A stretch of 63,371 nt of DNA, filler included, from Octopus bimaculoides (lineage: Eukaryota): the NCBI RefSeq assembly GCF_001194135.2. It is 6 parts of 5 records of this genome, joined end to end, with 100 filler letters (N's around TTAATTAATTAA, not from the genome) between each part and the next. Parts side by side here need not be neighbours in the genome. Positions count along the whole stretch, not along the records: positions 1 to 25,778 come from NC_068994.1; 5 more parts are not named here. One strand, written 5' to 3'. The position numbers and the translations under genes were made by a program. Below are positions 1 through 27,319 of the stretch, piece after piece; position 1 is the stretch's first letter, and the number at the start of each line of letters is the position of its first letter. Below the pieces are notes generated by a model that was given only the letters and a program-made list of their open reading frames with translations, made no database searches and was not told where the DNA came from.

Positions 1-1770
1 ATCTGCAGCAAGAAATTAAATTAAGTTTTTACGAACATTCGAAATGAAGATATCAAAAATGTGGAGAATCGATTCGTATCATGAAAATCGATTCGTATGA
101 GGAGCTGTGGAAGCGATCTTACGTCTCATTTGATGCAAAAAGTAAGCCTGAGTGACTGTCATCGCCCACATTAATGGATAATATAAACTCATAAAAGCAC
201 AACTCCCAAAGTGAACAAAACAGAACACACACACACAGATTACGAACGTTTAAACACAAATACATTTACACAAGTTACATACATGTACAATTAAAAAAAT
301 ATATTTTTAACTATTAGTTCCACTTCATCATTGACATGTAATTAGCTAAATATTATTATGTCGCTCATGTGTAATTAAGAGAAGCTAATGAAGACATGCA
401 AAAAGAGATATCAAGAGATGGATAATAAGCATGTTCGTGTACAGTAAATATAACTATTATAGAGGAAAGGGGGTGCTACGTGTCTGCTTCTCTGCTGAAA
501 GAAATCCGACATGGTATCTTAACATTTGTGATGTATTTATTATATACTTGCTGGGAAAGCCTGGTATTTTACAGTGGAGAGATTGAATCTTTGACTCATA
601 CTGAAGAAATCATGACATGTCGGTTTCGACGACAAGGGTTGCAGTTGATTCAACAAACGGAACAGCCTGCTCGTGAAATTAAACTACGTGTGTGTGTGTG
701 TGTGTGAATGTATGTATGTATGTAGTACAACGCATTACAACATAACGGCTTCAAGAATAAAATACGTTAANNNNNNNNNNNNNNNNNNNNNNNNNNNNNN
801 NNNNNNNNNNNNNNNNNNNNNNNNNNNNNNNNNNNNNNNNNNNNNNNNNNNNNNNNNNNNNNNNNNNNNNNNNNNNNNNNNNNNNNNNNNNNNNNNNNNN
901 NNNNNNNNNNNNNNNNNNNNNNNNNNNNNNNNNNNNNNNNNNNNNNNNNNNNNNNNNNNNNNNNNNNNNNNNNNNNNNNNNNNNNNNNNNNNNNNNNNNN
1001 NNNNNNNNNNNNNNNNNNNNNNNNNNNNNNNNNNNNNNNNNNNNNNNNNNNNNNNNNNNNNNNNNNNNNNNNNNNNNNNNNNNNNNNNNNNNNNNNNNNN
1101 NNNNNNNNNNNNNNNNNNNNNNNNNNNNNNNNNNNNNNNNNNNNNNNNNNNNNNNNNNNNNNNNNNNNNNNNNNNNNNNNNNNNNNNNNNNNNNNNNNNN
1201 NNNNNNNNNNNNNNNNNNNNNNNNNNNNNNNNNNNNNNNNNNNNNNNNNNNNNNNNNNNNNNNNNNNNNNNNNNNNNNNNNNNNNNNNNNNNNNNNNNNN
1301 NNNNNNNNNNNNNNNNNNNNNNNNNNNNNNNNNNNNNNNNNNNNNNNNNNNNNNNNNNNNNNNNNNNNNNNNNNNNNNNNNNNNNNNNNNNNNNNNNNNN
1401 NNNNNNNNNNNNNNNNNNNNNNNNNNNNNNNNNNNNNNNNNNNNNNNNNNNNNNNNNNNNNNNNNNNNNNNNNNNNNNNNNNNNNNNNNNNNNNNNNCTG
1501 AAGCTTCGTGGAATTTGAACTCAGAACGTATCGAATCAGAACAAATGCCACAAAGCATTTTGGCCGATTCTCTTATGACCCTCTGAAGCCACTGCCCTAA
1601 GATAATTTTTCCTAGTTTAGATACAAAGCCAGTAATTTTTAGGGGAGGGGTTAGTCGATTAACTGGATTCAGAGAATTGACTGGTATTTTTTGTTGACTC
1701 CAGAAGAATGAAAAGCCTAGAGTAGAAAAGAATATATGTGCGTATGAGTATCTGACATTTTTTTAATATG

Positions 1771-2130
1771 TTACTTGTTTCGGTCATTACACTGTGGCCA
1801 TGCTGAGGCACCACCTTGAAGGATTTTTAATCGAATGAATCGACCCCAGTACTTATTTTCTTTTTATTCTATCGGTGTCTTTTGCTGAACCGCTAATTTA
1901 CGGTGATGTAATCACACTAACACCGGTTGTCAAGAAGTGTTGGGGGTAAACACAGGCACAAAGACACACGCACACAGATACATATGTACATACACGACAG
2001 GCTTCTTTCAGTTTCTGTCTACCAAATTCACTCACATGGCTTTGGTCAGCCTAAGGCTATAGCAGAAGATACTTGTCCAAGGTGCCATGAAATGGGTCTG
2101 AACCCAGAACCATGTAGCTGGACAGCAAAC
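1771..2130 (-). mobile_element. tRNA-derived SINE, family A (old copy)
   Basis: Homologous along its length to 18098-18494, including the central microsatellite and the ...ggccgcagtcaaatgactgaaacaagtaa tail. Confidence 0.8.
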
Positions 2131-2157
2131 TTCTTAGCACACACACACACACACATA

Positions 2158-2427
2158 TTTACTTGTATCAATCATTCGACTGTGGCCATAAAGGAATACC
2201 AGATTGAAGGGTTTAGGCGAACATAGAGACGCCAGTATTTACATTTTTTGAAGCCTGGTACTCATTTTATCGGTTCCATTTATGCCGAACCGGTACGTTA
2301 CGCGGACGTAGGACGTAAACAAATCGACACCAATTATCAAGCATTGGACTAACACAGAAACATGCACACACAGATATACATGCACACACACATTTGTGTA
2401 TCTATGTATCTGTCAGCCAATCTATAA

Positions 2428-2465
<38 letters not shown>

Positions 2466-2855
2466 GTAGCTATGTTTCTATATACGATAGGATTCAACAT
2501 AGTTTCCTATTTCTTTATTGCCCACAAGGGGCTAAACATAGAGGGGACAAACAAGGACGGACAAAGGGATTAAGTCGATTACATCGACCCCAGTGTGTAA
2601 CTGGTACTTATTTAATCGACCCCGAAAGGATGAAAGGCAAAGTCGACTTCGCGGAATTTGAACTCAGAACGTATCGGCAGACGAAATATCGCTAAGCATT
2701 TCGCCCGGCGTGCTAACGTTTCTGCCAGCTCGCCTTCGACATAGTTTCCGTCAACCAAATTCACTTCCAAGACATTAGTCAGCCTGGGGGCTATAGTATA
2801 AGATACTTGCCCAAGATGCAGCGCAATGGAACTAAACGAAACGGAAACCATGTAN
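2158..2855 (-). mobile_element. SINE family A interrupted by a family B copy
   Basis: Family A tail at 2158-2400 and head at 2750-2855, separated by the B insertion. Confidence 0.75.
2508..2738 (-). mobile_element. tRNA-derived SINE, family B, full length with an 11-bp TSD
   Basis: Head GAAGGCGAGCTGGCAGAAACGTTAGC...GAGTTCAAATTCC (A/B-box-like). TSD ACATAGTTTCC at 2497-2507 and 2739-2749. Confidence 0.9.
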
Positions 2856-3374
2856 NNNNNNNNNNNNNNNNNNNNNNNNNNNNNNNNNNNNNNNNNNNNN
2901 NNNNNNNNNNNNNNNNNNNNNNNNNNNNNNNNNNNNNNNNNNNNNNNNNNNNNNNNNNNNNNNNNNNNNNNNNNNNNNNNNNNNNNNNNNNNNNNNNNNN
3001 NNNNNNNNNNNNNNNNNNNNNNNNNNNNNNNNNNNNNNNNNNNNNNNNNNNNNNNNNNNNNNNNNNNNNNNNNNNNNNNNNNNNNNNNNNNNNNNNNNNN
3101 NNNNNNNNNNNNNNNNNNNNNNNNNNNNNNNNNNNNNNNNNNNNNNNNNNNNNNNNNNNNNNNNNNNNNNNNNNNNNNNNNNNNNNNNNNNNNNNNNNNN
3201 NNNNATATTGTATATTATATTACATATTGTATATTCCATATTCTATATCCCACATTGGTTTTGCAGGAATATAAATAAAACATAAAAAACAGACAGTGTT
3301 GGAACTCTTTTAAACAAAATAATATATTCCTCTATACACAATCATACAAAACCCCTTTTTTTGTATTTATTTTT

Positions 3375-3445
<71 letters not shown>

Positions 3446-3723
3446 TATATATATACATATATGGAGAAGAGAGAAAGTATAAATGTATATGTATGTATGT
3501 ATGTATTTATGTATGTATTTATGTATGCATGTATGTATGTATGTATGTATGTAATGTATGTATGTGTGTATGTATGTATGTATGTATACGTGTATGTACG
3601 TATATGAATGGCATTTAAGCCTGATAGGTTCGTATGACTGATGATAAGTCGATGCTAAAAGCAAACTAAGTAGGTCTACAGTTCTATGACCTTCTGATAA
3701 ATGAGCACGTAGAAATGTCTTAC

Positions 3724-3840
3724 CTCTATAACATTTGTCATCGGTTTCACCGTCTTTGGTGCATAATGCCTTTGCCAACAGTGTGTTCGGTGATAAATCG
3801 TCTGAATCAGCTGCGTATCCATTTGACAAAAGCAGTTTAT
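3724..3840 (-). CDS. Internal coding exon of an unidentified gene (paralogous exon copy A)
   Basis: Bounded by cctcttcttctaacAG| and G|GTAAGA; 117 nt, phase 1-1; encodes xKLLLSNGYAADSDDLSPNTLLAKALCTKDGETDDKCYRx. Homology to copy B stops at the splice sites. Confidence 0.8.
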
Positions 3841-3929
3841 CTGTTAGAAGAAGAGGTGTGATGGGGGAGAAAACACAGGACAAGTTTTGATAAGAATTAA
3901 TATTTCCATATAAAAGAAAACAAGAGAAA

Positions 3930-4217
3930 CAGAACAAAACAAAACAAAACAAAGCAAAATCGACTCCTTTCCCTTCTCATCATCATCATCATTAAAACTC
4001 TCCTCTTCCTTCGGTTTCTCCTCCTTGTCCTCTGCTTTATCATCATCATCATCATCGTCATAAAAATCCTTCTTTTCTTCCACTTAATATCATCGTCGTC
4101 ATCATCATCATCATCATCATCGCCATCGAAATCTTCCTTCACGTTTTTTTCCTCCTCCATCTCCTTCTCAACCATCAACTCCCTCCTCCTCCTCCTCCTC
4201 CTCCTCCTTATCATCAT

Positions 4218-4249
<32 letters not shown>

Positions 4250-4320
4250 TCATCATCAGTATTGTCGTCATCGTCACCGTCGTTGTTGTCACCGTAGTTA
4301 CCTTCATCGCCATCGCATCT
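3930..4320. repeat. Compound trinucleotide microsatellite (CAT/CCT/CAC)n, preceded by (AAAAC)n
   Basis: Direct inspection; it explains the poly-D/M/R ORFs. Confidence 0.9.
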
Positions 4321-5260
4321 ACACGATCACCCAAATCCACGAATCACGTCACCATCAGAATGTCCTTGAACGTAATGGCTGTTCTTCTTACCTTAATTGC
4401 TATGTCTTAAGAGTATTCCTCTAAGTGCNNNNNNNNNNNNNNNNNNNNNNNNNNNNNNNNNNNNNNNNNNNNNNNNNNNNNNNNNNNNNNNNNNNNNNNN
4501 NNNNNNNNNNNNNNNNNNNNNNNNNNNNNNNNNNNNNNNNNNNNNNNNNNNNNNNNNNNNNNNNNNNNNNNNNNNNNNNNNNNNNNNNNNNNNNNNNNNN
4601 NNNNNNNNNNNNNNNNNNNNNNNNNNNNNNNNNNNNNNNNNNNNNNNNNNNNNNNNNNNNNNNNNNNNNNNNNNNNNNNNNNNNNNNNNNNNNNNNNNNN
4701 NNNNNNNNNNNNNNNNNNNNNNNNNNNNNNNNNNNNNNNNNNNNNNNNNNNNNNNNNNNNNNNNNNNNNNNNNNNNNNNNNNNNNNNNNNNNNNNNNNNN
4801 NNNNNNNNNNNNNNNNNNNNNNNNNNNNNNNNNNNNNNNNNNNNNNNNNNNNNNNNNNNNNNNNNNNNNNNNNNNNNNNNNNNNNNNNNNNNNNNNNNNN
4901 NNNNNNNNNNNNNNNNNNNNNNNNNNNNNNNNNNNNNNNNNNNNNNNNNNNNNNNNNNNNNNNNNNNNNNNNNNNNNNNNNNNNNNNNNNNNNNNNNNNN
5001 NNNNNNNNNNNNNNNNNNNNNNNNNNNNNNNNNNNNNNNNNNNNNNNNNNNNNNNNNNNNNNNNNNNNNNNNNNNNNNNNNNNNNNNNNNNNNNNNNNNN
5101 NNNNNNNNNNNNNNNNNNNNNNNNNNNNNNNNNNNNNNNNNNNNNNNNNNNNNNNNNNNNNNNNNNNNNNNNNNNNNNNNNNNNNNNNNNNNNNNNNNNN
5201 NNNNNNNNNNNNNNNNNNNNNNNNNNNNNNNNNNNNNNNNNNNNNNNNNNNNNNNNNNNN

Positions 5261-5325
<65 letters not shown>

Positions 5326-5444
5326 TGTATGTATGCATATAAGTATGTATATATTTGAACGTGCCTGAGTATGAGTTGGTATGTATGTACATGTACCTAT
5401 ATATATGTAGATTCACATATCCATGTATATATGTATGCATGTGC

Positions 5445-5772
5445 ATTAGCTCACTGGTTAGTGACGGGGTCACAAACATGAGGTAGTGAGTTCGATTCCC
5501 GGACCGGGCTGTGTATAATATTCTTGAGCAAGACACTTTATTTCACTTTGTTCCAGATCACCTCGGCTGTAGAAATGAGTTGAGATGTCACTGATGCCAA
5601 GCTGTATTAGCTTTTGCCTTTCCCTTGGATAATACCAGTGGAGGGAAGGAGGGAGGCTGGCATGCATGGGCGGCGGATGATCTTCCATAAAAATCCTTGA
5701 CCGGACTTGTGCCTCGGGGAGTAGCTTCCTAGGTGCTGTCCTATGGTTACTCTTGACAGAAGGATGTCTTTA
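5445..5772 (+). mobile_element. tRNA-derived SINE, family C (old copy)
   Basis: Homologous to 8634-8967 (gttcgattcccggaccggg...ttcttgagcaagacactttatttcac...). Confidence 0.8.
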
Positions 5773-6775
5773 CCTGATATATGTAGGAGGATAAGCAGCT
5801 GAAATAACACCCAATGTATGATTATGGAACTTTTTGACTTTTAAATGACAAAAAATTACAAAGGTGACTGACACTCTAAGTGCTATGCACGAAACTCTCG
5901 GTCCTTGAGACTCTATAGTAANNNNNNNNNNNNNNNNNNNNNNNNNNNNNNNNNNNNNNNNNNNNNNNNNNNNNNNNNNNNNNNNNNNNNNNNNNNNNNN
6001 NNNNNNNNNNNNNNNNNNNNNNNNNNNNNNNNNNNNNNNNNNNNNNNNNNNNNNNNNNNNNNNNNNNNNNNNNNNNNNNNNNNNNNNNNNNNNNNNNNNN
6101 NNNNNNNNNNNNNNNNNNNNNNNNNNNNNNNNNNNNNNNNNNNNNNNNNNNNNNNNNNNNNNNNNNNNNNNNNNNNNNNNNNNNNNNNNNNNNNNNNNNN
6201 NNNNNNNNNNNNNNNNNNNNNNNNNNNNNNNNNNNNNNNNNNNNNNNNNNNNNNNNNNNNNNNNNNNNNNNNNNNNNNNNNNNNNNNNNNNNNNNNNNNN
6301 NNNNNNNNNNNNNNNNNNNNNNNNNNNNNNNNNNNNNNNNNNNNNNNNNNNNNNNNNNNNNNNNNNNNNNNNNNNNNNNNNNNNNNNNNNNNNNNNNNNN
6401 NNNNNNNNNNNNNNNNNNNNNNNNNNNNNNNNNNNNNNNNNNNNNNNNNNNNNNNNNNNNNNNNNNNNNNNNNNNNNNNNNNNNNNNNNNNNNNNNNNNN
6501 NNNNNNNNNNNNNNNNNNNNNNNNNNNNNNNNNNNNNNNNNNNNNNNNNNNNNNNNNNNNNNNNNNNNNNNNNNNNNNNNNNNNNNNNNNNNNNNNNNNN
6601 NNNNNNNNNNNNNNNNNNNNNNNNNNNNNNNNNNNNNNNNNNNNNNNNNNNNNNNNNNNNNNNNNNNNNNNNNNNNNNNNNNNNNNNNNNNNNNNNNNNN
6701 NNNNNNNNNNNNNNNNNNNNNNNNNNNNNNNNNNNNNNNNNNNNNNNNNNNNNNNNNNNNNNNNNNNNNNNNNNN

Positions 6776-6840
<65 letters not shown>

Positions 6841-7177
6841 CATTATCAGAAACTAACGGAATAAAAAAAAAATCCAGGCATATATCCGAAGATCTAATAC
6901 ATATTTATCAACAGAGATGTAATGTGTTTATGGAAACCGGTTAACCATACAGACATAGATATATACATATGCACTCACGCCTCCCTGTATTCTGCTTTCT
7001 GTTGACGTTCATGCACTTGAATATATAAATATCAAACAGATGGGATTGTGCTTCAGTGTATATTTTATGCTTTGATACATATATTTTACATATGCTTCTT
7101 TCTTTCTAAACATTAGCTTTCAATTGATCTGTGTCTTAATTGTCACTTTGTTTAATGACAACGCTGTGACACTGTCT

Positions 7178-7229
<52 letters not shown>

Positions 7230-7576
7230 CCTTTCTTTCTCTTTCATATATATATATATATANNNNNNNNNNNNNNNNNNNNNNNNNNNNNNNNNNNNNN
7301 NNNNNNNNNNNNNNNNNNNNNNNNNNNNNNNNNNNNNNNNNNNNNNNNNNNNNNNNNNNNNNNNNNNNNNNNNNNNNNNNNNNNNNNNNNNNNNNNNNNN
7401 NNNNNNNNNNNNNNNNNNNNNNNNNNNNNNNNNNNNNNNNNNNNNNNNNNNNNNNNNNNNNNNNNNNNNNNNNNNNNNNNNNNNNNNNNNNNNNNNNNNN
7501 NNNNNNNNNNNNNNNNNNNNNNNNNNNNNNNNNNNNTAATCAACTTAATCCCCTCCCGCACAAGCTGCCCTTGTGG

Positions 7577-7609
<33 letters not shown>

Positions 7610-7630
7610 CATCATCATCATCATCATTTC

Positions 7631-7760
7631 CACCGAGGTTGACTTTGACTTTCATCCTTTCGGGGTCGATTAAATAAGTACCAGTTGCGTACTGGGGATC
7701 GATCTAATCGATTGGCCCCCTCCCCCAAAATTTCGGGCCTTGTGCCTAAAGTAGAAAAGA
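7631..7760 (+). mobile_element. SINE family B, 3' part with (ATT)n tail
   Basis: gactttgactttcatcctttcggggtcgattaaataagtaccag...ccttgtgcctaaagtagaaaaga followed by (ATT)n. Confidence 0.8.
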
Positions 7761-8633
7761 TTATTATTATTATTATTACTATTATTATTATTATTATTAT
7801 TATTATTAGTCTACATTTATAATGTTATAAAGTTATACCACTCTGAACGTAGTTTATTGAGCACTTTATTAGATTTTTGCTATAAAGATACATTCCTTTT
7901 GAATTTTGAAATACTGTTAGTCCAACTACTTTAAGCTACACACTTGCACGTGCACGCATGTGTGCATGTGAGTTTGTGCGTATGTATTTATGTGTGTGCG
8001 TTTGTGCATGAATGTATGTATGTAAGTATGTATGTACGTGTGTATGTGTGTAACTGCAAGCCATGCTAACGAATGAAGTTATTTCCTTTTTAGTTGATAA
8101 CCAGGAGGACGCAGGATTAGCAAAATCTATAGAGCATCTACGAAATACCTTATGCCTCCTTTACGTGCTGAGTGCAAATCAACCGAGATTCAGATTAACG
8201 CTTTATTCTATCGTTCTTATTCAACTTTATCTTCCGCGTTTAATCTATTTAATCTAGGAGCTCGATTTAATCTATTTTACTCTCTCATCAAAACGTGCGG
8301 GCCGTGCAAAGAACTAGCTGATTATTATTGATATAGATTCAAATTATTTGTACCGTAATTTTGTGACTTATATAGACATTAATATAGATAAGGAATCGTT
8401 TAAATGAAATGTCTGAATGTCTCAGATGAGTTGAATTTAATAATTTCTTACATTGATAGAGAGTCACAAAATTTTGGCGGGAATTGGCTAGTCGACTAAA
8501 TCAAAAACAGTATCTCCGTTATAGTTTATTTAATCTACCTCGGAAGAAGGAAAGACAAAGTTGAAATACTGACTGCGGTGTAATTTGAACTCAGAATAAG
8601 AAGGGCTCTATGTAAATATCGCAAAGTATTTAT

Positions 8634-8967
8634 GAAGGCGCATGGCTCAGTGGCTAGAGCGTCGAGCTTACGATCGTGAGGTTGTGAGTTCGAATCCGGG
8701 ACCGGGCTGCGTGTTGTGTTCTTGAGCAAAACACTTTATTTCACGTTGCTCCAGTTCACTCAGCTGTAGAAATGAGTTGCGACGTCACAGGTGCCAAGCT
8801 GTACTGGCCTTTGCCTTTCCCTTGGTTAACACTGGTGGCGTGGAGAGGGGAGGCTGGTATGCATGGGCAGCTGCTGGTCTACCATAAACAACCTTGCCCG
8901 GACTTGTGCCTCAGAGGGTAACTTTCTAGGTGCAATCCCATGGTCAGTCATGACCGAAGCGGGGTCT
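8634..8967 (+). mobile_element. tRNA-derived SINE, family C, full length, inserted into a minus-strand family B copy
   Basis: tRNA-like head GGCGCATGGCTCAGTGGCTAGAGC...GAGTTCGAATCC. It is flanked by family B body (8465-8630) and B head (8968-9005). Confidence 0.88.
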
Positions 8968-9169
8968 CAGCATTTGGTCCGATGCTCTAACGATTCTTGC
9001 AAAGCCACGAAGTTATAATTTATTGGATTATTAACTTCATCTTTTAAATTTTAGAAGCTTTAAAATATCTATACGTATACCTTCTTTTCTCCTTTTTATT
9101 CCTGTCGGACCTACAGTCTTATGGGATCGGATTTAATTGGATTTTCATGGCGTTTAAGTCAAGAGTAGA

Positions 9170-9363
9170 AGACTTCCACCCGCTGAACGAAAAGTCTGTC
9201 CGTCACAAGGATAATCCCTGTTTGTCATCCTTAGCTGAATGTATTGGAGCAACATGAAGTGAAGTGCACTGTTCAAGGACACTTTGTATCGCCCGGTCCA
9301 AGACTCGAATTTACTGACTAACGACCATGAGGCCAACACTCTATACGTTAGTCGCGCGCCTTC
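9170..9363 (-). mobile_element. Old tRNA-derived SINE with a family C-like head
   Basis: Reverse complement tgaaggcgcgcg...aaattcgagtcttggaccgggcg...gtgtccttgaacagtgcacttcacttcatgttgctcca. Confidence 0.55.
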
Positions 9364-10210
9364 AAAGATCTACAATACTTTTCACTTAAGCCTAGAAAAA
9401 CTGGTGCCGGTTTGTGTTGGCAAAAATTAACCAATGATGTTCACGAGTTTGAATAAATCAGTATGCTATGGATGACTGGAACCTTATGTTCCAGGAATGA
9501 GCTTTCCAACTACTGAAATTTTTTCATTTCTCTCTCAGACGAAGAGTTAGTGTCGAAACGTCAGGTTTCTTCATCTTCCATTCCCAATAATCATGAGCTA
9601 TATTATTTTTCAATCAGTTTGGTCTTCGATCATCAACAGATGCCTTATTCATGGTTATTATAGAATACCAGAATGAATGAGAACGAGAAACATTCATTTC
9701 CAAACAGTCATAATTAGGTCATTGAATCATGTACAAAGCGCATGTTAGTGGACTAATAGCAAAGGTAGGACATTATTACTCTTTGTTCATAAATACAAAC
9801 GTTCCTTGTTCGAATCCAGTCAGGTATTTACATACACATCCAAGGGAAAAGGTATACCTGATGTTGCTTAGAGATCAAATTGGAATTTCTATTTGACTGC
9901 ATAGTTTGGAGACTTTAATTAATCACTACAAAAATGTGAGGGAAGGATAATAGAATGTTTCTATCATAGTCACAAGGCTGGAAATTTGAAAGGGTATAGA
10001 TGATTAAATCGTTGCCTGCGGGACATTTATTTTATCGAACTTGGAAAGACGACAGGCAAAATTTACCTCAGCGGGATTTGAATTTAAAAAACCAAGAAGC
10101 AGAAAGAAATACAGCAAGACATTTGCACGATACCCAAATGATTCTGCCAATCAATGGAATAATATGAGTGTTAAATTAGAAATAAATGAAAATAAGATCA
10201 AAACGTTTAC

Positions 10211-10330
10211 CTCTGTAACATTTGACGTCAATTTCTCCATCTTTGGTGCACAGTGCCTTTGCCAACAGCGCTGCGTTGGGTGATAAATGGTCCGAATCAG
10301 TTACATATCCGTTTGTCAAAACAAGCTTAT
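10211..10330 (-). CDS. Internal coding exon of an unidentified gene (paralogous exon copy B)
   Basis: Bounded by ttgttttttcAG| and G|GTAAAC; 120 nt, phase 1-1; encodes xKLVLTNGYVTDSDHLSPNAALLAKALCTKDGEIDVKCYRx. It is 31/40 identical to copy A, with many synonymous differences. Confidence 0.8.
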
Positions 10331-10626
10331 CTGAAAAAACAAATACAGACAATACATATTAAAACAACAAAATAAAAACAAAAGGGTTTGTAGTTTGATG
10401 GATTTTTAGCATTTAAAACAAGCAGTCGAAAAATACAGACAAAACAAAATCAGAACAGTTTCATTAACATCCGGTGTACTGTAATCATCAAGACACCTTT
10501 CTACAAAAGATGCAACTCATTTTATTTATTCGTTTATTTTTTCAGCTGAGTGGACTGGAAAAGTGCTTTGTTATTTCATTTTCATGCTCTTCCTCCAATC
10601 CTCTCCCAGTCCTTCTCCCGCAAATC

Positions 10627-10682
<56 letters not shown>

Positions 10683-10735
10683 TNNNNNNNNNNNNNNNNN
10701 NNNNNNNNNNNNNNNNNNNNNNNNNNNNNNNNNNN

Positions 10736-10774
<39 letters not shown>

Positions 10775-10978
10775 AATATTCCCTCTGCTCATGTCCTTCC
10801 GACAAGTGTTGACCTACAACAGTTTAAGAGGAATATTGATGGCATCGTGCTCATCGGTCTAGGAGGGCCTGTAAAGGGTCACAGACAATGACCCACCCTC
10901 CAGATTCAATAGGGACACATACACATATATTTATACATATATTATAAATATGTATATATATATGTAGCATATATATAT

Positions 10979-11014
<36 letters not shown>

Positions 11015-11042
11015 ATATATATATACAGTTTATATATATATG

Positions 11043-11913
11043 CAGGGTGCGGTGAATAATTTGTCGTCTAAATTACGCAAAAATGAAAATAACACTGACA
11101 TCTCATTTTAACATATATATTTACTAAAATTACATAAAAATATCTTTAAATACTAAAGGGTAAATTTATTCAATAAAATCGTCATTGGCTTCGACCACGA
11201 TCTCCAGACAACTTCGGAATCTCCTGCGACTCTTCTGGACGTCTTCTTGCCATAATCCTTGCTTTCAGTTCATCTTTGGTATTACAAGGAGCTTTGTTGG
11301 TCTCTCGTTCAACTGCGCCCCACACATAACAATCAAGGGGGTTGCAGTGTGGGGAATTAGGTGGCCAGATATTAGGAGTGATGTGGTCGTATAAATTGTC
11401 TGACAGCCATGACTGGGTTCTCCTTGCTAGTGTGGCATGGTGCAGAATCGTGTTGCCAGATGTAGGGTCTTCCAGCAGCCACCCTCTTGATCCAGGGCAG
11501 CACTACCTCTTCCATGCACTTGATGTAGGCCTCCCTGTTGAGTCTTAGGCCATGTGGGAAGATGAATGGAGACATAACGTCGCCATCACTAGTGATCACT
11601 CCAAACGCCATGATGTTGACTGGATGTTTGATTTTTATCACACTCGGTATATGTCTTCAGATTGCACTGTCGTCAGGTTGACACCCAAATACTTTGAAAT
11701 GTTCGCATTTGAGCTTCCGGTGCGAATGCCAAGCAGTACAGCATGACATTTCCAAATTTCTGGCGGAGTGAATTGCGTCATGGTGCTGTTTTTCTCACAG
11801 ACGGTGCCCAACTGACCTTACTATACTGTGTAGTCAACAAAATCAAAAACAAACAATGCACATGCATGAAATAAAATATATAAAAGGGCGGGCAATTTAC
11901 CCATCACACCGTG
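11043..11913 (-). mobile_element. Tc1/mariner-superfamily maT-like (DD37D) transposon relic, internally deleted
   Basis: Transposase C-terminal part KHPVNIMAFGVITSDG...WQHDSAPCHTS(frameshift)RRTQSWLSDN...WPPNSPHCNPLDCYVWGAVE...DDFIE*. After correcting one frameshift there are 37 residues between the last two Asp. Diverged TIRs: CAGGGTGCGGTGAATAATTTG / CACGGTGTGATGGGTAAATTG. Confidence 0.85.
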
Positions 11914-25460: not shown

Positions 25461-25778
25461 CACAAAGGAGTATCCAAAAGTAACCGGAAACGTACTCTGT
25501 GTGACAAGCCCGTTGTAGTTTCTGCTAGGAAAAACAGCGGCTGAAACAGTTGTCATGCTTCAAACAGCTTACAAGGACGCTGCCATGAGTAAAACACAAA
25601 GTTTTCGAGTGGTTTTCTCGCTTCGGGAATGGTCACTTGACGCTTGAAGACCAACCTCGTTCAGGGTGACTGTCAACCTCCCCGAACGAATGAAAACATC
25701 ACGAAAATGCATCAACTGATCTTGGAGGACATTCGCCGAACAATTGGAGAACTTGTTGATATGACTTGTGTGTCCTGT
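25461..25778 (+). mobile_element. Mariner transposon 5' fragment (truncated at a gap)
   Basis: Degenerate N-terminal HTH: GKTAAETVVMLQTAYKDAAMSKTQ(fs)VFEWFSRFGNGHLTLEDQPRSG*LSTSRTNENITKMHQLILEDIRRTIGELV. Confidence 0.8.
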
Positions 25779-26502: not shown

Positions 26503-27319
26503 NNNNNNNNNNNNNNNNNNNNNNNNNNNNNNNNNNNNNNNNNNNNNNNNNNNNNNNNNNNNNNNNNNNNNNNNNNNNNNNNNNNNNNNNNNNNNNNNNN
26601 NNNNNNNNNNNNNNNNNNNNNNNNNNNNNNNNNNNNNNNNNNNNNNNNNNNNNNNNNNNNNNNNNNNNNNNNNNNNNNNNNNNNNNNNNNNNNNNNNNNN
26701 NNNNNNNNNNNNNNNNNNNNNNNNNNNNNNNNNNNNNNNNNNNNNNNNNNNNNNNNNNNNNNNNNNNNNNNNNNNNNNNNNNNNNNNNNNNNNNNNNNNN
26801 NNNNNNNNNNNNNNNNNNNNNNNNNNNNNNNNNNNNNNNNNNNNNNNNNNNNNNNNNNNNNNNNNNNNNNNNNNNNNNNNNNNCACACACACACATATAT
26901 CCATATATGTATATAAAATGTGAATGGTATTATATGATCTTACACAGTTTTAGTCTTCAAATTTGAGAAAGCAATAGTAAAAAATACAAGAAGTTTTTAT
27001 GTGTCATGAATATTTTTTGATAATTTGAATATTTAACAAAACAACTGTTGTGTTGCTAATTGTATTTATAAACCTCTAAACTATCGCAACAGCAGCCCTC
27101 ATCTATTTTACACCTTTCACTACACCCAATCCTGCTGCAACAACAGTTTTTGCCACCACATCTACAACAATCAAACTCATCAAATTTTAAGTGTTAACAA
27201 GTCCAGTGGCGAAAGTGTTCACACTTCCGTCACCGGTTCTGCTACAACCACTACAGTACACCATTTCATCTTTCAGTCACCTTTACCTTATCATATATGC
27301 TTTAAAACGGGTTCGAATG

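What the first reader, a model, noticed from the sequence alone, without database searches (positions are those of the whole stretch)
3724..10330. Two anciently duplicated, selectively constrained phase 1-1 exons of an unrecognised gene
Seen: exons of 120 and 117 nt lie 6.4 kb apart on the same strand, both with canonical splice sites and the same phase, and share 31/40 aa. I count about 11 synonymous codon differences and no homology in the flanking introns, which points to purifying selection. Both keep an LLAKALC-x9-CYR motif. I do not recognise the family. Inference: either mutually exclusive exons or consecutive units of a novel tandem cysteine-containing repeat protein (joined ...KCYR-D-KLLLSNGY...). 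No other coding exon is visible between them, but about 2 kb there is N.
Basis: partly seen in the sequence, partly recalled or inferred. Interest (0 to 1): 0.75.

Follow-up and report, generated by a model that had tools for sequence, protein, structure and literature searches.

The report
Duplicated exons of octopus secreted precursor
The two look-alike exons are real, neighbouring coding exons of a small secreted octopus protein that databases list only as "uncharacterized"; it looks like a peptide-hormone precursor found only in octopuses and cuttlefish, which is mildly interesting but not a new kind of biology.

Summary
On the minus strand, 10211-10330 (120 nt) and 3724-3840 (117 nt) are AG/GT-bounded phase 1-1 exons. 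They share 31/39 residues, have 11 synonymous-only codon differences (dN/dS about 0.1), and show no similarity beyond the splice sites.

All three assembly gaps lie inside the intron between them. An intronless 905-nt contig (L001) contains both exons at 100% identity and joins 10211 directly to 3840. They are therefore consecutive exons, not mutually exclusive ones.

The gene is the orthologue of Octopus sinensis LOC115219547 (138 aa, "uncharacterized"), also predicted in O. vulgaris. The protein has a hydrophobic signal-like N-terminus, two 40-aa C-x9-C units (these exons), and a basic tail. Exons 1, 4 and 5 lie outside the window.

Argonauta hians has the same two-unit, five-exon gene. Sepia esculenta transcripts have one unit. 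An exhaustive HMMER search found no credible relative beyond these, and there was no Pfam or PDB match.

The most conserved part is the tail: two invariant KR sites flank a 21-residue segment, followed by a C-terminal FFS[DE]W. I infer a coleoid-restricted prohormone-like precursor. Processing and function are untested. It is an ordinary exon duplication in an orphan gene.

The parts
10211..10330 (-). Coding exon 2 (unit 1, 120 nt, phase 1-1): (D)KLVLTNGYVTDSDHLSPNAALLAKALCTKDGEIDVKCYR. Acceptor AG at 10331-10332, donor GT at 10209-10210.
   Evidence: 100% identical to L001 443-562. Matches residues 18-57 of XP_029645612.1 except K19 in place of N. Splice sites.
3724..3840 (-). Coding exon 3 (unit 2, 117 nt, phase 1-1): (D)KLLLSNGYAADSDDLSPNTLLAKALCTKDGETDDKCYR. 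Acceptor AG at 3841-3842, donor GT at 3722-3723.
   Evidence: 100% identical to L001 563-679, directly following exon 2 in the transcript. 100% match to residues 58-96 of P0001.
3841..10210 (-). Intron between the two unit exons: 6370 nt as assembled, of which 1960 are N in three gaps. It holds microsatellites and dispersed repeats and no third unit.
   Evidence: The orthologous Argonauta intron is only about 355 nt.
10331..25778 (-). 3' part of intron 1. The signal-peptide exon and 5' UTR (L001 1-442) are not found here.
   Evidence: tblastn and blastn of P0001 and L001 against the window find no exon 1. The gene spans about 100 kb in O. sinensis and O. vulgaris. Argonauta intron 1 is about 16.5 kb.
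1..3723 (-). 5' part of intron 3. Exons 4 and 5, which encode the basic tail DISLPKEW...KRFFSDW, are not found here.
   Evidence: Argonauta intron 3 is about 16.7 kb. A 61-nt exon hidden in gap 771-1497 or 2855-3204 cannot be strictly excluded.

Best explanation
The two segments are coding exons 2 and 3, both included in every available record, of the orthologue of Octopus sinensis LOC115219547, read on the minus strand. By analogy with Argonauta the gene has five coding exons. It encodes a 138-aa secreted precursor with three parts:
- a hydrophobic N-terminal signal sequence (exon 1, outside the window);
- two tandem 39/40-residue units (the two exons of the finding), mostly acidic, each a predicted helix (LSPN..LLAKAL) followed by a C-x9-C loop that probably forms a disulfide;
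- a basic 42-residue tail (exons 4-5, outside the window).

The second unit arose by duplication of a symmetric phase 1-1 exon in the octopod lineage. This happened after the split from cuttlefish, where one unit is seen, and before the Octopus-Argonauta split. Both copies have since been kept under purifying selection.

Inferred mechanism (not shown): the protein enters the secretory pathway. Prohormone convertases cut at the two invariant KR sites and release a conserved-length 21-residue cationic peptide (Octopus AIQKKGLLERILQAKLNDQRS) and a C-terminal FFSDW peptide. The Cys-loop units would act as a propiece or as co-secreted products. In short, it is a coleoid-restricted prohormone-like or secreted-peptide precursor.

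Confidence by layer: gene structure and tandem use about 0.95; secreted protein about 0.8; KR processing into bioactive peptides about 0.45. The single figure given is for the whole statement.
For: Shown:
- Exon identity, splice sites and the direct B-to-A junction in an intronless transcript contig.
- 99% identity over 100% of the joined units to XP_029645612.1, plus the O. vulgaris model.
- Argonauta hians has the same architecture and the same phase 1-1 exon boundaries.
- A Sepia esculenta homologue with one unit appears in 37 RNA-seq assemblies; the species comes from PMC10442824 and PMC10466719.
- dN/dS is about 0.1 between the units.
- The N-terminus is MK plus a 14-residue hydrophobic core, with a maximum Kyte-Doolittle(11) value of 2.8.

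Supporting the prohormone inference:
- Invariant residues cluster in the tail: K109 R110 Q113 K115 G116 L118 L122 K132 R133 F134 F135 S136 W138.
- The segment between the two invariant KR sites is 21 residues long in all three genera and carries a charge of +3 or +4.
- By my count on the alignment, the tail is 64% identical between Octopus and Argonauta, against 52-54% for the units.
Against: - No processed peptide, tissue expression or receptor is known.
- No homology to any named neuropeptide, hormone, pheromone or defence family. Pfam, PDB and HMMER against 1.84 billion representatives were all negative.
- No amidation signal is present.
- The KK site is GK in Argonauta.
- The residues just after exon 1 (VQ|D) do not fit the -3/-1 rule for signal cleavage, so the cleavage site is unclear.
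- If the units were only a propiece, strong selection on them (dN/dS 0.1) would be unexpected. They are probably functional themselves.
- The AlphaFold model is unreliable (pLDDT 50.8).
Confidence: 0.55

Rival explanations
1. A secreted two-domain Cys-loop protein in which the 40-residue units are themselves the functional parts, for example a water-borne or mucus signalling, binding or defence protein. On this view the KR sites in the tail are not used for peptide release.
For: Selection on the units is strong within Octopus (dN 0.09 at dS 0.8). The cysteine pair and the LL..ALC helix are conserved as far as Sepia. The duplication was retained in two octopod families.
Against: The units diverge quickly between genera (52-54% Octopus-Argonauta, about 23% to Sepia), while the tail with its KR sites is the best-conserved part. 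No known Cys-domain family matches.
Confidence: 0.27
2. A host-defence (antimicrobial) peptide precursor: signal peptide, then an acidic propiece (the two units), then a cationic peptide released at KR.
For: The propiece is acidic in Octopus (unit net charge -1 and -3) and the 21-mer is cationic (+3 or +4). This layout is typical of many antimicrobial peptide precursors (background knowledge).
Against: The helical hydrophobic moment of the 21-mer is low in Octopus and Sepia (0.17 and 0.11). Argonauta unit 2 is basic (+2). The length and sequence are conserved, which is unusual for fast-evolving defence peptides.
Confidence: 0.08
3. Mutually exclusive exons: each mRNA carries only one of the two units.
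For: The exons have the same phase, nearly the same length and high similarity, which is the classic signature. Skipping either one keeps the reading frame.
Against: The only octopus transcript contig holds both, joined directly. All octopod models hold both. No single-unit or zero-unit octopus form exists among the hits in the 5.8-billion-cluster database, nor by exact look-up.
Confidence: 0.04
4. The similarity reflects a transposon, a high-copy repeat or non-functional pseudo-exons.
For: The window is rich in dispersed repeats and holds a Tc1/mariner remnant.
Against: There are only two copies in the window. Only one gene cluster per species turns up in 5.8 billion protein clusters. The exons are spliced into a complete ORF, their similarity is confined to the exons, and dN/dS is 0.1.
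Confidence: 0.01

Closest known systems
Octopus sinensis LOC115219547 (XP_029645612.1, UniRef100_A0A6P7T5Q4) and Octopus vulgaris CAI9733111.1, both listed as 'uncharacterized/hypothetical protein'
   Same: The two window exons encode residues 18-96 with a single difference, K19 instead of N. A transcript (P0003/L001) carries exactly the window's version.
   Different: Nothing of substance: this is the same gene in the same or a very close species. The window holds only exons 2 and 3 of it.
Argonauta hians Ahia01_000684900 (139 aa)
   Same: 58% identity. It has the same signal sequence, two units and KR...KRFFSDW tail, and the same phase 1-1 120-nt unit exons.
   Different: The intron between the units is about 355 nt against about 6.4 kb here. 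The units are much more diverged from each other (51% against 79%). KK is replaced by GK.
Sepia esculenta transcript protein P0006 (104 aa, unnamed)
   Same: It shares the signal sequence, one LL.SALC-x9-C unit, the KR-ALQKKGLL.RIL 21-mer followed by KR, and the C-terminal FFSEW.
   Different: It has a single unit and only 37-44% identity. Six to seven extra residues precede FFSEW.
Invertebrate neuropeptide/prohormone precursors in general (signal peptide, spacer or associated peptide, dibasic-flanked conserved peptides)
   Same: The overall layout matches, and conservation is concentrated on the dibasic sites and the peptides between them.
   Different: There is no sequence relationship to any named family, no amidation glycine, and no peptide repeated in many copies. 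Processing has not been demonstrated.

Membership tests
Orthologue of O. sinensis LOC115219547 (unnamed coleoid family) | Near-identical sequence over both unit exons, in the same order | tested here: met
   99% identity and 100% coverage of the joined units. 100% nucleotide identity to transcript L001.
Orthologue of O. sinensis LOC115219547 (unnamed coleoid family) | Remaining exons (signal peptide, KR-rich tail) present at the locus | not testable with these tools
   They are not in the 25.8-kb piece. The gene spans about 100 kb in the chromosome-level assemblies, whose DNA could not be fetched.
Orthologue of O. sinensis LOC115219547 (unnamed coleoid family) | Conserved exon-intron structure (phase 1-1 unit exons) | tested here: met
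   The Argonauta locus L012 has identical boundaries and phases.
Mutually exclusive exon pair | Same phase and similar length, adjacent, homologous | tested here: met
Mutually exclusive exon pair | The two exons never occur together in one mRNA | tested here: not met
   L001 contains both, contiguous. No single-unit isoform was found.
Prohormone / neuropeptide precursor | N-terminal signal peptide | tested here: inconclusive
   The N-terminus has an MK plus 14-residue hydrophobic core in all three genera. No dedicated predictor was available. The cleavage site is unclear in Octopus and canonical (AQG|) in Sepia.
Prohormone / neuropeptide precursor | Conserved dibasic sites flanking conserved peptides | tested here: met
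   KR109-110 and KR132-133 are invariant. The segment between them is 21 residues in all three genera, and the C-terminal FFS[DE]W is conserved.
Prohormone / neuropeptide precursor | Processed peptides detected, and expression in neurosecretory cells | not testable with these tools
   No peptidomic or expression data were reachable. Literature searches by sequence and by accession returned nothing.
Prohormone / neuropeptide precursor | Homology to a named peptide family | tested here: not met
   Pfam, PDB and HMMER against 1.84 billion representatives were negative.
Transposon or high-copy repeat | Many dispersed copies, or similarity extending beyond the ORF | tested here: not met
   Two copies in the window, one protein cluster per species, and similarity confined to the exons.

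The most novel reading that the evidence does not exclude
The gene encodes a previously undescribed peptide-hormone or neuropeptide system specific to coleoid cephalopods. It would yield a 21-residue cationic peptide plus an FFS[DE]W peptide, and in octopods a doubled disulfide-loop peptide, acting through an unidentified receptor. The octopod exon duplication would double the dose of the Cys-loop product or diversify it.
Probability: 0.3. Interest if true: 0.5.

Novelty: new member of a known kind. Interest (0 to 1): 0.3.

Why it matters
Lineage-restricted secreted peptides are candidate signalling molecules behind cephalopod-specific physiology and behaviour, and this family has no name, domain or literature. 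The locus is also a clean, datable example of symmetric-exon duplication: one unit in cuttlefish and two in octopods, kept at dN/dS about 0.1. As a genomic feature, though, it is an ordinary tandem exon duplication in a gene that annotation pipelines already predict.

Tried and rejected
- Pfam on the single units, the joined units and all family members gave nothing. The only hit was a sub-threshold CCB2_CCB4 match at E 0.11.
- PDB sequence searches with a unit and with the family profile gave only insignificant LapB/TPR matches at E 0.1 or worse.
- AlphaFold2 on the 5-sequence alignment gave pLDDT 50.8 and pTM 0.33. That is too poor for a fold search, so none was run.
- Rfam and tRNA scans of the window found nothing.
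- Literature searches by locus name, accessions and peptide strings found nothing relevant. A general search for cephalopod neuropeptide papers found no paper naming this protein.
- Genomic DNA of the O. sinensis and O. vulgaris loci could not be fetched because the gene range exceeds 100 kb. The true intron length and the positions of exons 1, 4 and 5 in Octopus therefore remain unverified.
- The HMMER hit P0005 is Physella acuta XP_059173645.1, with 20-residue FLTNGFTTDTNIISP.PQST repeats (E 1.5e-6 over 8 stretches). I treated it as a repeat-inflated, probably chance resemblance to LVLTNGYVTDSDHLSPN, not as homology.
- Gene conversion was considered as the reason the Octopus units are so alike. 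It is not needed: the distances are additive if the Argonauta branches are long.
Full report
**Observation**

The finding's two segments lie on the minus strand. Exon B is 10211-10330 (120 nt) and exon A is 3724-3840 (117 nt). Each is preceded by a pyrimidine-rich tract and AG, and followed by GTAA. Both are phase 1-1.

They translate to DKLVLTNGYVTDSDHLSPNAALLAKALCTKDGEIDVKCYR (B) and DKLLLSNGYAADSDDLSPNTLLAKALCTKDGETDDKCYR (A).

- They share 31 of 39 aligned residues, with one single-codon indel.
- 11 codons differ only synonymously, and 95-96 of 117 nucleotides are identical.
- Nei-Gojobori estimates are dN 0.09 and dS 0.8-0.9, so dN/dS is 0.10-0.12.
- Within the window the match has a tblastn E-value of 1.5e-16, and there is no third copy on either strand.
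- Nucleotide similarity ends within 3-4 nt of the exon edges.

**Gaps**

The N runs at 4429-5260, 5922-6775 and 7263-7536 total 1960 N. All lie inside the intron that separates the exons. The nearest gap edge is 588 nt from exon A and 2674 nt from exon B, so neither reading frame reaches a gap.

Whether the flanks are continuous matters only for the intron length, which is 6370 nt as assembled. Their order and orientation agree with the mRNA and with the orthologous Argonauta locus (see below).

**What the gene is**

Searching the joined units against 5.8 billion protein clusters gave one hit. It was Octopus sinensis XP_029645612.1 (LOC115219547, "uncharacterized protein", 138 aa), at 99% identity over 100% of the query. 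Its cluster also holds O. vulgaris CAI9733111.1 and a protein from a Logan assembly of run SRR32601320.

That assembly contig (L001, 905 nt) has no introns and carries the whole ORF. Window exon B equals L001 443-562 and exon A equals L001 563-679. Both are 100% identical, and the two are contiguous in the contig.

No exon hidden in the gaps is required.

The window's K19 (N in the two annotated models) matches L001. The source is therefore an octopus of, or very near, the O. vulgaris/sinensis group.

**Protein layout**

- Residues 1-17, MKLLTVFGFVC(V/G)LIFVQ: signal-like, with a maximum Kyte-Doolittle value of 2.8.
- Unit 1, then unit 2.
- Tail: DISLPKEWGSVIKRAIQKKGLLERILQAKLNDQRSKRFFSDW.

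Neither the 5' exon(s) (L001 1-442) nor the tail exons (L001 680-905) occur in the window. This is expected, because the gene spans about 100 kb in both chromosome-level assemblies.

**Relatives**

HMMER against all 1.84 billion representative proteins found only three further proteins.

- *Argonauta hians* Ahia01_000684900 (139 aa, 58% identity) has the same signal sequence, two units and tail. Its locus (L012) shows five coding exons: signal, unit 1, unit 2 and two tail exons. The unit exons are 120 nt each, phase 1-1, with the same boundaries, but only about 355 nt apart. Introns 1 and 3 are about 16.5 kb each.
- P0006 (104 aa) occurs in 37 RNA-seq assemblies. Two of them belong to Sepia esculenta larval studies (PMC10442824, PMC10466719). 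It has one unit (…LLISALC-x9-C…) plus the tail KRALQKKGLLGRILAARSEPSFVKRRENVSNFFSEW.
- A Physella acuta mucin-like protein matches only through its 20-residue repeats. I regard this as a repeat-inflated chance match.

Pfam and PDB give nothing. The family looks restricted to coleoid cephalopods.

The unit exon was duplicated after the octopod-decapod split and before the Octopus-Argonauta split. This assumes that the single unit in Sepia is ancestral, which rests on one decapodiform species.

**Evolution of the units**

| Comparison | Identity | dN |
|---|---|---|
| Octopus U1 vs U2 | 79% | 0.09 |
| Argonauta U1 vs U2 | 51% | 0.70 |
| Octopus vs Argonauta units | 45-54% | 0.36-0.48 |

These distances are roughly additive if the Octopus branches are short and the Argonauta branches long. 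Unit-specific characters support 1:1 orthology: LVL and the AA insertion in unit 1, KLLL and GETD.KCY in unit 2. Gene conversion is therefore not required, although it is not excluded. With only about 26 synonymous sites the dS values are noisy.

**Mutually exclusive or tandem**

All four octopod records contain both units. No shorter octopus form was among the database hits. Exact look-ups of the hypothetical one-unit and zero-unit isoforms found nothing. The symmetric phases would allow exon skipping, so minor isoforms cannot be ruled out without read-level data. Even so, the mutually exclusive reading has no support.

**How it probably works (inference)**

Across Octopus, Argonauta and Sepia the invariant positions cluster in the tail: K109 R110 Q113 K115 G116 L118 L122 K132 R133 F134 F135 S136 W138. 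Within the unit, D71, S74, L79, L83, C84 and C94 are invariant, and D97 follows at the start of the tail.

The two KR sites are invariant. The stretch between them is 21 residues in all three genera and carries a charge of +3 or +4. The protein ends in FFS[DE]W.

A signal sequence, followed by mostly acidic spacer units, followed by conserved peptides flanked by dibasic sites, is the layout of a prohormone or secreted-peptide precursor. I therefore favour secretion followed by convertase cleavage at KR.

The strong constraint on the units in Octopus suggests they are functional products too, probably helix plus disulfide-loop modules. The AlphaFold2 secondary structure agrees with that shape, but the model is unreliable at pLDDT 50.8.

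The low helical hydrophobic moment of the 21-mer in Octopus and Sepia argues weakly against an antimicrobial peptide. Nothing here shows processing, tissue of expression or a target.

**Known or new**

The gene model already exists in public annotation as an uncharacterized protein. No paper in the searchable library mentions its accessions or peptide strings.

The genomic feature, a tandem duplication of a symmetric exon inside a small secreted-protein gene, is a familiar kind of event. What is unclaimed is the family itself: a coleoid-restricted putative peptide precursor.

**Verdict**

Novelty and interest are modest.

Noticed in passing
window 14154-14384 and 14395-14625: Two 231-nt stretches are 100% identical and flank a 10-N gap (14385-14394). 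This is almost certainly an assembly or gap-closing artefact, not a biological tandem duplication (family D7).
   Followed up: partly
window 11372-11811 (-): Two adjacent ORFs look like a degraded Tc1/mariner-type transposase (…WQHDSAPCHTS…). The only support is a weak Sleeping Beauty HTH hit at E 0.016. They lie in intron 1 of the gene.
   Followed up: partly
window 13083-13348 and 18099-18378; related inverted copies about 1927-2226 and 17230-17487: This is a dispersed SINE-like repeat family, 81-89% identical between the direct copies. Its spurious ORFs share …GFGQPKAIAEDTCPRCH…. No tRNA or Rfam match was found.
   Followed up: partly
window 5460-5762 and 8658-8959: Two roughly 300-nt direct copies, 80-81% identical, of another dispersed repeat. 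Both lie inside the intron between the two unit exons (families D9 and D14).
   Followed up: no
window about 3960-4330: A dense run of ATC/CTC-type trinucleotide microsatellite lies just upstream (in mRNA sense) of exon A. It produces long fake ORFs rich in D, H and M on both strands and is not coding.
   Followed up: no
P0005 (Physella acuta XP_059173645.1), residues about 300-600: A snail membrane protein has about 15 copies of a 20-residue repeat, FLTNGFTTDTNIISP.PQST. This resembles the N-terminal half of the octopus unit (LVLTNGYVTDSDHLSPN) at E 1.5e-6 over 8 stretches. It is probably chance inflated by the repeats, but it remains unexplained.
   Followed up: partly
L012 (Argonauta hians) 26582-27176 versus window 3724-10330: The intron between the unit exons is about 355 nt in Argonauta and about 6.4 kb in the octopus window. 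The two Argonauta units have diverged far more from each other (51% identity, dN 0.70) than the octopus pair (79%, dN 0.09).
   Followed up: yes
window 10325-10327 (-), codon 19: The window and transcript L001 encode Lys at residue 19, where the O. sinensis and O. vulgaris reference models have Asn. L001 shares Gly12 with O. vulgaris. The source is a close relative or another individual of that species complex.
   Followed up: partly
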